Of a stretch of DNA of 64,000 nucleotides, positions 49,874 to 56,227 are shown in pieces. The stretch is from NCBI RefSeq assembly GCF_964204865.1, contig NC_135254.1:24118001-24182000 (forward strand), given 5' to 3'. The stretch is from Styela clava (taxonomy: Eukaryota). Below the pieces are notes generated by a model. It was given only the letters and a program-made list of their open reading frames with translations, did not search any database and was not told the origin of the DNA. Numbering within the stretch: the first letter of the stretch is position 1; each line of letters begins with the position of its first letter. The position numbers and the translations under genes are program-made.

Positions 49874-51162
49874 TTTAGGATAGGATTTATCTGGGGGGAG
49901 GATTGCAGGTGCAATAACTAAATCATATGGCGAACCACAGTCTCTCATACGATTACCATTCTATGTTGGGATTAGTTAGCCAGTTATTTGTTTTCAGAAG
50001 CATGGACTTGGATGGTGGGGGATGGTCGTAACCGATCAGCGGTCGTGTGAACCACCCTCAGTGGGAGTAGAGCTGCAATCCTCTTGCACATAACTATCCC
50101 CGCATGGGATTGGAACCTGTGAAACTACCAGGGTAATCAGAGATGCGGTGGCGAGAGTATTCCTAAATGGCGAATTCAATTGAATTCTGGTTATTTTTTG
50201 CATGACCACCGGTGTTAAACTTTAGTTATTTATTCAACCTTTCACACTTAGTAATAGATTACCCGCTAACTAGGGAAACAATACCTCATGGCAATTGATG
50301 ATTAATTCCCTACACAAGTCAAGCCAGCAAGTAGGCCTACGCCTAGGCCTACCAATAACAGTAGTTTGTCATCTGCTTTCCATTGAAATGAGGGAGCTTA
50401 TGAATATTTAAAATAATTGATAACGGCACATTATCACTCACCATCAACGAAGTGCTGTCCGCAAACAGTGAAACACAAGCGAGATGATTTCTGGACTTGA
50501 CACCAAGCAGTCCTGCCAATAGATTGGCGCGGCGGTGTGGCTCAACGGGCTAAGCGTTAGGAATACGCTCGCCACCGCACCTCTAATTACTCTGCGTGGG
50601 TTCGCAGGTTCGAATCCCATGCAGGGATGGTTATGTGCGAGAAGATTGCTAGACTCCTCGACGTCGTTAGGTGGTTCACGTAACGGCTGGTCGGTTACGG
50701 CTTCCTCCACCACCAAGTCCATGCTTCCGAAAGAAAACAATATAACTAATCCCATACCCGACTTGGAATGGTAACCGGACGAGAGGCCGTGGTTCGCCAT
50801 ATGGATAAGCCGTCTTATTGGCTTCCCACCCCCCCCAACCCCCCCCCCCCCCCCCCCCCCCCGGGATGAACATGTAAATCCTATCCTAAATCCTAGATGA
50901 TATCCACATTGCGCGACGTTCCGGATCTTTTGAAAACAGTGGAATATAACTGAAGATCCATTTCGTTGTCCATATCTATACTATACGTACAGCGGTATGT
51001 TAGTCGTTGACGTACAGCCAACGGAACAATACGAAATAACCATTTCAACAGCCAAACAAAACGAAAACGTATAATCCGTCTTGCAACTGACAGGAGCCAA
51101 ATAGACGTTTTTGTTTTTTTGCCGTCCAGTAAACAAAGTCACGTGACCCGTGCAAATCCTCT
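49874..51162 (-). repeat. inverted copy of the first ~0.9 kb of the ISL2EU-like element (end + THAP exon + intron + old SINE), interrupted by a younger SINE
   Basis: Reverse complement aligns continuously to 42835-43725 once 50525-50898 is removed; THAP ATG at 51043 on minus. Confidence 0.9.
50525..50893 (+). mobile_element. full-length tRNA-derived SINE
   Basis: Pol III A box TGGCTCAACGG (50538-50548), B box GGTTCGAATCC (50607-50617), 3' simple-repeat tail ATCCTATCCTAAATCC; TSD TAGAT (50520-50524 / 50894-50898); the empty site is visible in the paralogous arm at ~43070-43090. Confidence 0.92.
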
Positions 51163-51241
51163 ATACCGGTAACCTTGATTTGCTCACAAAATCTGGCAAC
51201 TGCTGCTATGAAATTGACATATTTTCGCTACAACGATAATT

Positions 51242-51252
51242 CATCCTTTTCT
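51242..51252 (+). promoter_or_regulatory. polypyrimidine (TCT/5'TOP) initiator of RPL12
   Basis: CATCCTTTTCT about 115 nt upstream of the RPL12 ATG; typical of ribosomal-protein gene start sites. Confidence 0.6.
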
Positions 51253-51362
51253 ATGCCGGTACTAGCTGGGAAGGTGCAACTTCGAAAGGTCGGTTAAAAC
51301 TTTAGCCATCCACACCAGTATCCAAAGTAATCAGGCGTATATTTTGCGTCAAAATTATAAAG

Positions 51363-54745
<3,383 letters not shown>

Positions 54746-54795
54746 AGTGAAGGACGGCTGTTCATCTTTATCTCCTTTAGGTGGGCATGAAGTGT

Positions 54796-54815
54796 AATAA
54801 ATTTATTACAATAAA
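54796..54815 (+). terminator. polyadenylation signals of RPL12
   Basis: AATAAA at 54796-54801 and 54810-54815, 50-70 nt after the stop codon. Confidence 0.7.
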
Positions 54816-56227
54816 AAAACACCAAATGTCTGATTTTCTTATGTTTGGCTGGGGTGCAGTATGAAACACAATGACAGTCATCGTGAAACGTATATAACAT
54901 GACGCCTATTCTTTCAGTTGTTCCGGCAAACTTTATATTATGTCATTAGTGCTGAGAAATTGCTTTCAATGGGCGGCATGATAAATGTACTGTGGACATG
55001 GCCCGTTACATTTTGTTATTTGCTAATGTCTATACCTTGGCTTCTAGGGAAATGTATGATATATCTATCCATTGAGGTTAGAGGAGTAAATTATTGACAA
55101 GTTGAACTTTGTGAGAAATTCGTAGGGGTTGACATGAGATAACCTCGATTCGAAATTTGCATGCGGTAATCACACTTAACGATAGTGCTGCCTAATTTCA
55201 TTCGCCGAAATAGAAGCCATGAAAAGAAACTCACGGAAAAATTTTTTTGGTGGATTTAATTCTATATATAATTTGTGACGCTTAGCTTTGGTAGAAAAAG
55301 CTCTTGAGCGCCAACAGCTTTTGCAACTGAGTGAGCTCCGAAGCAAAGAGCCTCCCAATGTAAATAAGAATTTGGTTTGAGAACTCACTCCGTCCGACGA
55401 TGGTGTATTGCAGTGGTTTCCAAATTTTTTTCCGCGATTCCTGTTTACGTAAAATCCAAAATTGCAGATATTCGCGATATCATAACAAACAAAAAAAGTT
55501 CAGCAGTTTCAAAAATCAGTGAATCCTATTTAATTGCCTTAATGATAACAATGCGCTTGCATATGGTCTTAAGTTTCTGGAAACTTGCTATTTCATGAAA
55601 AGCATAGACAGAGGATTTATTCACGGTAGTAATTACTTTCATGACCTTTACTCGTGCTGATGGCGCTTCAATTTACGTTAAAAATATTCTACAGGTTTAT
55701 CGGCGCGTAGTTTTATTTTTGCAATGATTATACTTATTCTTTTGAAAGAATTTTCCCCCAGACAACACACTTCGTTCGGCTTACAATATATATCAGCGAA
55801 TCCAAGAAATTTCTCGAAGTTTTTGTTTATATCCATGTATTGGTGGTATCGATACTCTTCTATTTTGAGTTAATTAGAAATGTAAGTAACTGCGAACTTC
55901 GAAAAATTAGCAAATCTGCCGGTAAGCGTAACAGTATCTGGTATGTTAGTCGTTGATCTGGACATATATATATATAGTCGGCCGATCACGGTTGTCCGTG
56001 GTGCGGTAAATTTATTCACGAACCCCCACCTACATTTCAACAAAAGTCACTAGTTACTTCTTTCCCCTGGGGCAAAGTTTTATCCAAGCATGTGGCTCAC
56101 CAAGCCAACGAATATGGTATGACACAATGCCTAAATTCCAAGCCATATATACAACCCACATAAGTTCAATACATCTCTTCCCAAATCTTATTCAGACATG
56201 GAAATCGGCAATTAAAATAGTATAGAA

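What the first reader, a model, noticed from the sequence alone, without database searches (positions are those of the whole stretch)
51258..51323. RPL12 5'UTR carries a structured element apparently conserved with human RPL12; possible uL11 binding-site mimic
Seen: CTGGGAAGGTGCAACTTCGAAAGGTCGGTTAAAACTTTAGCCATCCACACCAG can fold as an outer CUGG/CCAG helix enclosing hairpin GAAG-[GUGCAA]-CUUC (51270-51283) and hairpin GGUUAA/UUAGCC. From memory (needs checking), the human RPL12 5'UTR reads ...CCAAGGTGCAACTTCCTTCGGTCGTCCCGAATCCGGGTTCATCCGACACCAG..., sharing AAGGTGCAACTTC, GGTCG and CATCC-ACACCAG in the same order, with a different-sequence hairpin (CCCG/CGGG) where this one has GGUUAA/UUAGCC. 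Primary-sequence conservation of a UTR over this distance is unusual. Established: uL11 binds the H43/H44 GTPase-associated centre, whose H44 loop is a GU...A hexaloop (GUAAUA in E. coli), and rpl-12 autoregulates via splicing/NMD in C. elegans. Inference: the GUGCAA hexaloop in a multibranch fold could be an rRNA mimic for autogenous control of RPL12, like bacterial r-protein leaders.
Basis: partly seen in the sequence, partly recalled or inferred. Interest (0 to 1): 0.78.

Follow-up and report, generated by a model that had tools for sequence, protein, structure and literature searches.

The report
Conserved structured RNA in RPL12 5'UTR
The leader of the sea squirt's ribosomal protein L12 (uL11) mRNA carries a small folded RNA element that recurs, with compensating base changes, in the same gene of mites, copepods, a snail-like and a sea-anemone-like animal, so it is probably an old control switch for this protein.

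Summary
The window is Styela clava. Positions 51264-51322 lie in the transcribed 5'UTR of a six-exon RPL12/uL11 gene.

The same ordered blocks (GGUGCAAC, GGU[C/A]G, CAUCC, A-CACC) occur upstream of the RPL12 start codon in 17 of 80 metagenome loci. All 17 look metazoan: mite, periwinkle-like, copepod-like, sea-anemone-like and unplaced animals. Fungal, plant, green-algal and octocoral loci gave no match.

Comparison supports a two-helix fold. P1 is GGUG:CACC. P2 is GG:CC, a 2x2 internal loop, then a covarying stem-loop. On 16 non-Styela sequences 94.2% of cells pair, against 77.1% in shuffles (0/500). A model built without Styela ranks the Styela UTR first in the window (19.9 bits, E about 6e-4).

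The base of P2 resembles the base of helix 43 of Styela 28S rRNA, where uL11 binds, but the match is short. Autogenous control by uL11 is my preferred, untested mechanism.

Rfam 15 and six literature searches show no such element.

The parts
51245..51252 (+). Pyrimidine tract CCTTTTCT, a possible TOP-type transcription start
   Evidence: Read directly from the sequence. Assembled transcripts start 11-31 nt downstream, at 51263-51276. The true 5' end is not determined, because contigs cannot show starts.
51263..51399 (+). Exon 1 as far as transcripts show it: the 5'UTR plus the first 37 coding bases
   Evidence: Spliced contigs of runs X1, X10, X12 and X13 cover 51263/51266/51272/51276 to 51397 and join to 53258, GT..AG with the cut +2.
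51264..51322 (+). The conserved RPL12 5'UTR element as a whole (extent of the covariance-model match)
   Evidence: R3, built from 16 non-Styela sequences, gives 19.9 bits, E 6.1e-4, rank 1 of 16 matches in the 64-kb window. R1, from 7 seeds, gives 10.3 bits, E 0.61, rank 4.
51273..51276 (+). P1 5' strand, GGUG
   Evidence: Pairs with 51313-51316 in the consensus model. P1 columns are 95.6% paired, with GC to UA and GC to CG double changes. Cognate flanks form better duplexes than non-cognate ones.
51277..51287 (+). Junction strand: conserved CAAC followed by UUCGAAA (U-rich, 5-7 nt, in the relatives)
   Evidence: GUGCAAC is present in 9 of 18 element sequences. It is unpaired in the consensus.
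51288..51311 (+). P2: GG:CC (51288-89 with 51310-11), 2x2 internal loop UC/AU (51290-91, 51308-09), 6-bp stem (51292-97 with 51302-07), loop AACU (51298-51301)
   Evidence: GGU[C/A]G...CAUCC occurs in 16 of 18 sequences, and CGUCG...CAUCG in L013 and L014. Distal pairs covary: UA 5, AU 4, GC 3, CG 2, UG 1 at one pair. Both of stem pairs 4-5 form in 12/16 cognate against 30/240 non-cognate arm combinations.
51312..51316 (+). Linker A and P1 3' strand CACC
51270..51283 (+).
   Evidence: It is part of the MFE fold. It has 4 bp in Styela and 0-2 bp in the 8 other GUGCAA-bearing sequences.
51363..51399 (+). RPL12 start codon and coding part of exon 1 ([12 protein letters not shown]-)
   Evidence: The product equals NCBI Styela clava uL11-like P0001.
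53260..53422 (+). RPL12 exon 2
53818..53909 (+). RPL12 exon 3
54264..54361 (+). RPL12 exon 4
54559..54660 (+). RPL12 exon 5
54740..54745 (+). RPL12 exon 6 coding part (GAA TGA)
   Evidence: The exons sum to 498 nt, that is 165 codons plus the stop.

Best explanation
Window 51264-51322 is the Styela clava copy of a structured cis-regulatory RNA that sits in the 5'UTR of RPL12 (uL11) mRNAs of many animals.

Shown:
- It is transcribed and single-copy.
- Its sequence blocks and two helices are conserved with compensatory changes in cnidarian-like, mollusc-like, mite, copepod-like and other metazoan RPL12 leaders. The helices are P1 (GGUG:CACC plus a variable outer extension) and P2 (GG:CC, a 2x2 loop U[C/A]/AU, G:C, then a variable stem-loop).

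Inferred:
- The element is an operator bound by free uL11. The base of P2 copies the base of 28S rRNA helix 43, the stem whose minor groove the uL11 C-terminal domain binds.
- Binding close to the cap (and, in some species, next to the AUG) would block initiation.
- On the pre-mRNA it could bias intron-1 splicing towards NMD isoforms. That would give the negative feedback already known genetically for C. elegans rpl-12.

I put the 'conserved structured RNA' part at about 0.9. The figure given as confidence refers to the uL11-operator mechanism.
For: Location and expression:
- Spliced contigs start at 51263-51276.
- The genome holds one copy.

Conservation:
- The blocks are found in 15 of 80 loci by pattern.
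- L013 and L014 are added by model R2. They are the only 5'UTR hits among 41 further loci, 85.7 kb.

Independent detection:
- R1, built from 7 seeds without Styela, finds the non-seed loci L020 (1.3e-5), L012 (6.6e-4), L003 (5.7e-3), L009 (6.7e-3) and L008 (0.015). Each hit lies just upstream of the RPL12 ATG.
- R3, built without Styela, ranks the Styela UTR first in the window at 19.9 bits, E 6.1e-4. The next hit scores 14.2 bits.

Covariation:
- 94.2% of cells pair against 77.1% in shuffles (0/500).
- The covariation score is 0.374 against 0.108 (0/500).
- 6 of 11 pairs show double changes (2/500).
- Slid controls pair at 42-61%.
- The cognate versus non-cognate arm tests gave 0 of 20000 permutations for both helices.

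Taxa.

rRNA likeness:
- Rfam's consensus structure for Styela 28S helix 43 is CGG-UG-GCC[9 nt]GGA-AU-CCG.
- P2 is GG-U[C/A]-G...C-AU-CC.

Position in the mRNA:
- P2 starts 23-50 nt from the contig 5' end in L002, L008, L013, L020 and L025.
- It ends 7-9 nt before the AUG in L009, L013 and L014.

Literature (passages read):
- uL11 overexpression re-programs its own splicing in C. elegans, and human RPL12 has AS-NMD isoforms (PMC4937301, PMC8047918).
- The uL11 C-terminal domain binds 28S rRNA (PMC9122527).
Against: - No binding or feedback experiment exists for this element.
- The rRNA likeness is only 7 nucleotides. GGU...AUCC co-occurs 12 times in Styela 28S against 11.6 in shuffles.
- The element has no counterpart of helix 44 as a hairpin.
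- The element model does not match the rRNA significantly (5.0 bits, E 6.3).
- R1, the only model wholly independent of Styela, scores the Styela UTR at just 10.3 bits, E 0.61.
- The alignments used for counting were fitted to the model, which favours it.
- An octocoral RPL12 leader (L005/L006) shows no element.
- Most loci come from unnamed metagenome contigs. Their taxa are inferred from protein identity only.
- The transcription start is not mapped.
Confidence: 0.5

Rival explanations
1. The element is a conserved structured operator, but its partner is not uL11. It could be another RNA-binding protein or complex: a stalk-base partner such as uL10/P0 or its nuclear paralogue, a TOP-mRNA regulator, or a dedicated translation or localisation factor.
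For: The conservation and covariation say only that an RNA structure is selected. They do not say who binds it. The rRNA likeness is statistically weak. The invariant unpaired CAAC has no clear counterpart at the uL11 contact surface.
Against: The element is specific to RPL12 leaders in every case found. In the Styela genome it occurs once, which fits gene-specific feedback. uL11 is known genetically to regulate its own mRNA (PMC8047918 and PMC4937301, passages). The P2 base matches helix 43.
Confidence: 0.3
2. One reading: a three-way junction (outer CUGG/CCAG, a hairpin with a GUGCAA hexaloop that mimics the helix-44 loop, and a second hairpin) is the functional form.
For: It is the MFE fold in Styela. 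The element model's best, non-significant match in the rRNA locus aligns the GGUGCAACU block with the helix-44 stretch GUGUGUAACAACU. The Styela hairpin could be a lineage-specific alternative conformer.
Against: The hairpin stem is 0-2 bp in the 8 other sequences with GUGCAA. GGUG pairs with CACC, with compensatory changes: GUUG:CAAC in L013 and L014, GCUG:CAGC in L020. The fold energy is not unusual (z = -1.61).
Confidence: 0.1
3. The conserved blocks act on DNA, as a promoter-proximal transcription-factor site downstream of the start site, and the RNA fold is incidental.
For: The element lies within about 20-70 bp of the putative start. Ribosomal-protein promoters often carry downstream elements (my own knowledge, not checked).
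Against: Stems whose two sides change together while the sequence varies are not expected of a DNA site. The hairpin length varies from 10 to 23 nt between the conserved flanks.
Confidence: 0.05

Closest known systems
RPL12 5'UTR structure of Pezizomycotina fungi (Gao, Jones and Rivas 2021, PMC8216456; table entry, one section and the figure legend read)
   Same: It lies in the same gene and the same mRNA region. It was proposed on covariation alone to be an autoregulatory ribosomal-protein motif.
   Different: It is reported only for Pezizomycotina (57 nt, 9 covarying pairs). The fungal-type leaders in my sample (L029, L034, L037, L038, L042, L073) lack GGU[C/A]G...CAUCC and are not matched by R2. 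By eye they pair a leader segment with the 5' splice site just after the ATG. I could not see the paper's figure or supplement, so identity with their motif is not established either way.
L10ARE in RPL10A/rpl-1 intron 1 (Takei et al. 2016, PMC4937301; passages read)
   Same: It is a ribosomal-protein cis-element conserved across metazoans. The encoded protein binds it directly to give negative feedback.
   Different: L10ARE is intronic, acts on 5' splice-site choice, and its binding was shown. The RPL12 element is in the 5'UTR, and its binding is untested.
Bacterial ribosomal-protein leaders that mimic rRNA sites (for example the L1 and L10(L12)4 leaders; my own knowledge)
   Same: A structured leader in the protein's own mRNA resembles part of its rRNA site, and translation is repressed when the protein is in excess.
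   Different: Bacterial L11 itself is not known as a repressor; its operon is controlled by L1 (my own knowledge). There is no sequence relation. Rfam 15 gives no match in the window's UTR or in 20 relatives.
28S rRNA helix 43 (GTPase-associated centre), the uL11 binding stem
   Same: The base of P2 and the base of helix 43 share GG:CC followed by a 2x2 internal loop with 5'-U and 3'-AU.
   Different: The upper stem and loop differ. There is no helix-44 hairpin. The order of the helix-44-like block (GUGCAAC) and the helix-43-like stem is reversed relative to the rRNA. The similarity is not statistically significant.
Iron-responsive element in ferritin 5'UTRs (my own knowledge)
   Same: It is a small protein-binding hairpin with an internal loop close to the cap, which would block 43S loading when bound.
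   Different: The motif and the binding protein are unrelated. Cap distance is only approximated here from contig ends.

Membership tests
Metazoan RPL12 5'UTR element (defined here; no Rfam accession) | Lies in the 5'UTR of an RPL12/uL11 mRNA, on the sense strand | tested here: met
   Positions 51264-51322 lie between the transcript starts (51263-51276) and the ATG at 51363.
Metazoan RPL12 5'UTR element (defined here; no Rfam accession) | P2 core GGU[C/A]G ... CAUCC enclosing a base-paired stem-loop | tested here: met
   GGUCG at 51288-51292 and CAUCC at 51307-51311, with a 6-bp stem.
Metazoan RPL12 5'UTR element (defined here; no Rfam accession) | P1 GGUG:CACC flanking P2, with CAAC following GGUG | tested here: met
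   51273-51280 and 51313-51316.
Metazoan RPL12 5'UTR element (defined here; no Rfam accession) | Significant score against a covariance model built without the candidate | tested here: met
   R3 gives 19.9 bits, E 6.1e-4, as the top hit of the window. Two caveats apply: R3's training alignment was laid out by R2, which had Styela among its 15 rows, and the fully independent R1 gives only 10.3 bits, E 0.61.
Fungal RPL12 5'UTR motif (Gao et al. 2021) | Shares sequence and structure with the Pezizomycotina motif | tested here: inconclusive
   Rfam 15 holds no model that matches the fungal or animal leaders. R2 finds nothing in the fungal-type loci.
Autoregulatory ribosomal-protein leader / rRNA mimic | Conserved structure in the protein's own mRNA | tested here: met
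Autoregulatory ribosomal-protein leader / rRNA mimic | Resembles the protein's rRNA binding site | tested here: inconclusive
   The base of P2 matches the base of helix 43 at 7 nt and in its 2x2 loop. However, GGU..AUCC pairs occur 12 times against 11.6 by chance, and the model hit on helix 44 scores 5.0 bits, E 6.3.
Autoregulatory ribosomal-protein leader / rRNA mimic | The encoded protein binds the element and represses its own expression | not testable with these tools
   Only indirect support exists: uL11 feedback on its own splicing in C. elegans (PMC4937301 and PMC8047918, passages).
Any Rfam 15 family | Match at or near the gathering score | tested here: not met
   No match in 51200-51400 at E <= 10. 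No relevant match in 20 related loci at E <= 1.
5' TOP mRNA | Transcript starts with C followed by an uninterrupted pyrimidine run | tested here: inconclusive
   CCTTTTCT lies at 51245-51252, but contigs begin at 51263 or later and cannot show the cap site.

The most novel reading that the evidence does not exclude
A pan-eumetazoan (cnidarian to chordate, probably including vertebrates) uL11 sensor sits in the RPL12 leader. It imitates the helix-43/helix-44 stalk-base RNA. It is the missing cis-element behind the uL11 autoregulation seen genetically in C. elegans and the AS-NMD isoforms of human RPL12. It would be one of the very few eukaryotic ribosomal-protein operators conserved across animals, and the first known case in which uL11 is its own repressor.
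Probability: 0.4. Interest if true: 0.85.

Novelty: new member of a known kind. Interest (0 to 1): 0.72.

Why it matters
Eukaryotic ribosomal-protein feedback is known for a handful of genes, and the RNA element is defined for fewer still. uL11 feedback has been known genetically since 2000, but none of my searches found a described binding site.

This would be a short element with clear covariation, present from a sea-anemone-like animal to a tunicate and sitting next to the cap. It gives a concrete, mutable target for binding assays, reporters and CLIP re-analysis. It also gives a seed for a new RNA family.

If the helix-43 likeness is real, it shows that a bacterial-style 'rRNA mimic in the leader' design operates in animals, for a protein that is not a repressor in bacteria.

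Tried and rejected
- **Rfam.** The scan of 50900-55500 and of 20 related loci found nothing for the leader.
- **Text search.** The window's 13-mer gave 0 papers.
- **Literature searches.** Searches gave only the fungal RPL12 motif and general autoregulation papers. PMC7247131 does not mention L11.
- **Genome-contig scan with P0001.** It returned one 419-nt fragment without a leader, L082.
- **Viral contigs pattern scan.** It returned two identical matches inside a coding region with no RPL12 downstream. I treat them as chance.
- **MAFFT alignment of all 16 sequences.** It mis-aligned Styela and L011. I replaced it with model-based alignments.
- **Chance resemblance.** Considered and rejected because.
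- **A second copy or paralogue in the genome.** Rejected: there is one DNA match, and P0002 is a variant model of the same gene, 157/165 identical.
- **SL trans-splicing at the AG at 51264-65.** Not supported: one contig begins at 51263 and reads through it.
- **Low-depth contigs in runs labelled organisms B, C and D.** They match Styela with 0-2 differences. I treat them as carry-over of the same species, not as independent support.
- **Organism D's own leader.** It was visible only as a 30-letter loose end and could not be used.

Full report
**What is in the window.**

The window is from the tunicate Styela clava. Exon 2 of the gene is 100% identical to NCBI 'large ribosomal subunit protein uL11-like [Styela clava]' (P0001).

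The gene is on the + strand. Its coding exons are 51363-51399, 53260-53422, 53818-53909, 54264-54361, 54559-54660 and 54740-54745. All five introns are confirmed by spliced contigs with GT..AG ends.

The same contigs begin at 51263, 51266, 51272 and 51276, so the reported stretch lies in the transcribed 5'UTR. A pyrimidine tract (51245-51252) may mark a TOP-type start, but contigs cannot show the cap site.

The genome holds one copy of this leader. A second Styela protein in the database is a variant model of the same gene (157/165 identical).

**The observation.**

The letters are as written. It is not unusual for the composition: z = -1.61, and 15 of 200 shuffles fold as well. For the full leader z = -1.40, with 24 of 200.

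Rfam 15 has nothing there at E <= 10.

I could not test the comparison with the human leader.

**Related sequences.**

I searched the metagenome collection with the database protein P0001. Of 591 matched stretches, 399 encode a relative, and the best 80 were kept. Many of these are metatranscriptome contigs with complete leaders.

Reading the 130 nt upstream of each start codon and a pattern scan showed the same ordered blocks in 15 of the 80 loci: [G]GUGCAAC, 5-7 mostly U-rich bases, GGU[C/A]G, a hairpin of variable sequence, (CU)CAUCC, A or A[A/C], then CACC. In each case they lie 9-102 nt before the ATG.

Two more loci, L013 and L014, carry a variant that model R2 found. They were the only 5'UTR hits among 41 further loci, 85.7 kb. 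The other two matches at E < 1 lie outside leaders.

**Who the relatives are.**

- L009 sits in a 90% protein cluster with oribatid mites (Oppia, Oppiella, Medioppia).
- L016 sits in a cluster with the periwinkle Littorina saxatilis.
- L008 is 93% identical to the sea anemone Exaiptasia and 91% to Anthopleura.
- L018's nearest named relatives are copepods (Lepeophtheirus 86%, Centropages and Acartia 84%). L020 and L023 are 84% and 82% identical to L018.
- L007's nearest credible named relatives are all animals, at about 80-82%.
- L002, L003, L004, L010, L011, L012, L013, L014, L025 and L057 are closest to animals but unplaced.

Loci that look fungal, plant, prasinophyte, yeast or octocoral (L005/L006) show no element. 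The sample holds no vertebrate, sponge, ctenophore, insect or nematode that I could recognise.

**The structure the comparison supports.**

The conserved fold is not a three-way junction.

- P1 pairs GGUG with CACC and continues outward with species-specific pairs.
- CAAC and the U-rich stretch are unpaired.
- P2 begins with GG:CC. It then has a 2x2 internal loop (5'-U[C/A], 3'-AU), a G:C pair, a position that is U.U, G.U, A-U or G-C, another G:C pair, and then a stem-loop of free sequence.

Evidence for this fold:

- On 16 non-Styela sequences aligned to the model, 94.2% of cells pair against 77.1% in column shuffles (0/500).
- The covariation score is 0.374 against 0.108 (0/500).
- 6 of 11 pairs show changes on both sides (2/500).
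- Sliding the partners by 1-3 columns drops pairing to 42-61%. One search gives the same picture with Styela included.
- Two distal pairs run through UA, AU, GC, CG and UG.
- L013 and L014 change otherwise invariant pairs in a compensatory way: GUUG:CAAC in P1, and C-G instead of G-C at the first P2 pair.
- A test that does not depend on the model-fitted alignment agrees. Both of stem pairs 4-5 form in 12 of 16 cognate arm combinations against 30 of 240 non-cognate ones. Cognate P1 flanks give duplexes of -11.4 kcal/mol on average, against -8.2 for non-cognate ones. Both tests gave 0 of 20000 permutations.

Caveats: the counted alignments were fitted to the model, the sequences are related, and E-values from the shortened calibration are rough.

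**Does Styela belong to this family?**

R1 was built from 7 sequences without Styela. It finds five non-seed leaders (E from 1.3e-5 to 0.015) but scores Styela at only 10.3 bits (E 0.61, rank 4 in the window).

R3 was built from 16 non-Styela sequences. It ranks 51264-51322 first in the 64-kb window at 19.9 bits, E about 6e-4, with the next hit at 14.2 bits. R3's training rows were laid out by R2, which had seen Styela, so a small leak in the alignment is possible.

Styela has every block, but with GCCAUCC instead of CUCAUCC and a one-base linker.

GAAG-[GUGCAA]-CUUC has 4 bp in Styela and 0-2 bp in the 8 other sequences that carry GUGCAA. It may therefore exist as a competing conformer there, but it is not the conserved feature.

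**Mechanism.**

The element is specific to one gene, structured, and old. It is close to the 5' end of the transcripts. P2 starts 23-50 nt from the contig end in L002, L008, L013, L020 and L025. In Styela P1 starts no more than 10 nt after the earliest contig start.

In L009, L013 and L014 it abuts the AUG, with 7-9 nt between them. That is the layout of a translational operator.

The obvious ligand is uL11 itself. Three passages support this:

- Overexpressed uL11 re-programs splicing of its own pre-mRNA in C. elegans, and human RPL12 has NMD-targeted isoforms (PMC4937301, PMC8047918).
- The uL11 C-terminal domain binds 28S rRNA at H42-H44 (PMC9122527).

In Styela 28S rRNA that stem (helix 43) reads CGG-UG-GCC[9 nt]GGA-AU-CCG in Rfam's consensus structure. 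That is GG:CC followed by a 2x2 loop with a 5' U and a 3' AU, as at the base of P2.

The likeness is short, and I do not regard it as demonstrated.

- GGU...AUCC co-occurs 12 times in the 28S against 11.6 in shuffles.
- The element model's best match in the 6.7-kb rRNA locus is only 5.0 bits, E 6.3.
- That match does fall on helix 44, aligning GGUGCAACU with GUGUGUAACAACU.

Binding, repression and any effect on intron-1 splicing are all inference.

**Comparison with what is known.**

The nearest published item is the RPL12 5'UTR structure of Pezizomycotina (PMC8216456). I read its table entry, one section and the figure legend. The fungal-type leaders in my sample lack the animal blocks, are not matched by R2, and appear to pair the leader with the 5' splice site right after the ATG. 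I therefore treat the animal element as a separate family. I could not see their figure or supplement.

L10ARE of RPL10A is the closest analogue in logic and breadth, but it is intronic and has been verified experimentally.

Rfam 15 and my searches show no description of the animal element. Subscription-only literature was not searched.

**Verdict.**

The proposed fold is wrong in detail. The proposed function is plausible and now directly testable.

I rate it a new member of a known kind: a ribosomal-protein leader.

Noticed in passing
window 54414-54527 (+), RPL12 intron 4: This is a weak match to a C/D-box snoRNA model (Afu_514, 18 bits, E 4.2), with a UGAUGC box near its start. It may be an intron-hosted snoRNA.
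   Followed up: no
window 54098-54224 (+), RPL12 intron 3: A contig from a run labelled as another organism (X12) covers part of this intron and joins it to exon 3 (joint 53911 to 54098, depth 19.8). This suggests a conserved intronic sequence, perhaps a snoRNA. There was no Rfam match at E <= 10.
   Followed up: no
window 51253-51297 (+): An upstream ATG at 51253 opens a 14-codon frame that ends at TAA 51295-51297, inside the element. Assembled transcripts start at 51263 or later, so it may lie outside the mRNA.
   Followed up: partly
window 50826-50865: There is a long C homopolymer (about 38 C interrupted by AA) some 400 bp upstream of the gene. Read mapping skipped repeats at 50800-50871.
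   Followed up: no
window 51141-51146: A palindromic CACGTG (E-box-like) site lies about 100 bp upstream of the putative start.
   Followed up: no
L029, L034, L037, L038, L042, L073 (fungal-type RPL12 leaders): A leader segment (CUUACG or a similar sequence) is complementary to the 5' splice site CGUAAG that directly follows the ATG, and an outer helix encloses both. This was read by eye. It may be the published Pezizomycotina RPL12 motif.
   Followed up: partly
L074 997-1171 (+): An H/ACA snoRNA snR80 match at the gathering score (40.8 bits) lies downstream of a fungal-type RPL12 gene.
   Followed up: no
runs X10, X12, X13: Runs labelled as three other organisms hold low-depth contigs (4-7x) that match Styela clava RPL12 with 0-2 differences. 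The same runs also hold their own, much deeper and diverged RPL12. This looks like carry-over between samples of one study.
   Followed up: no
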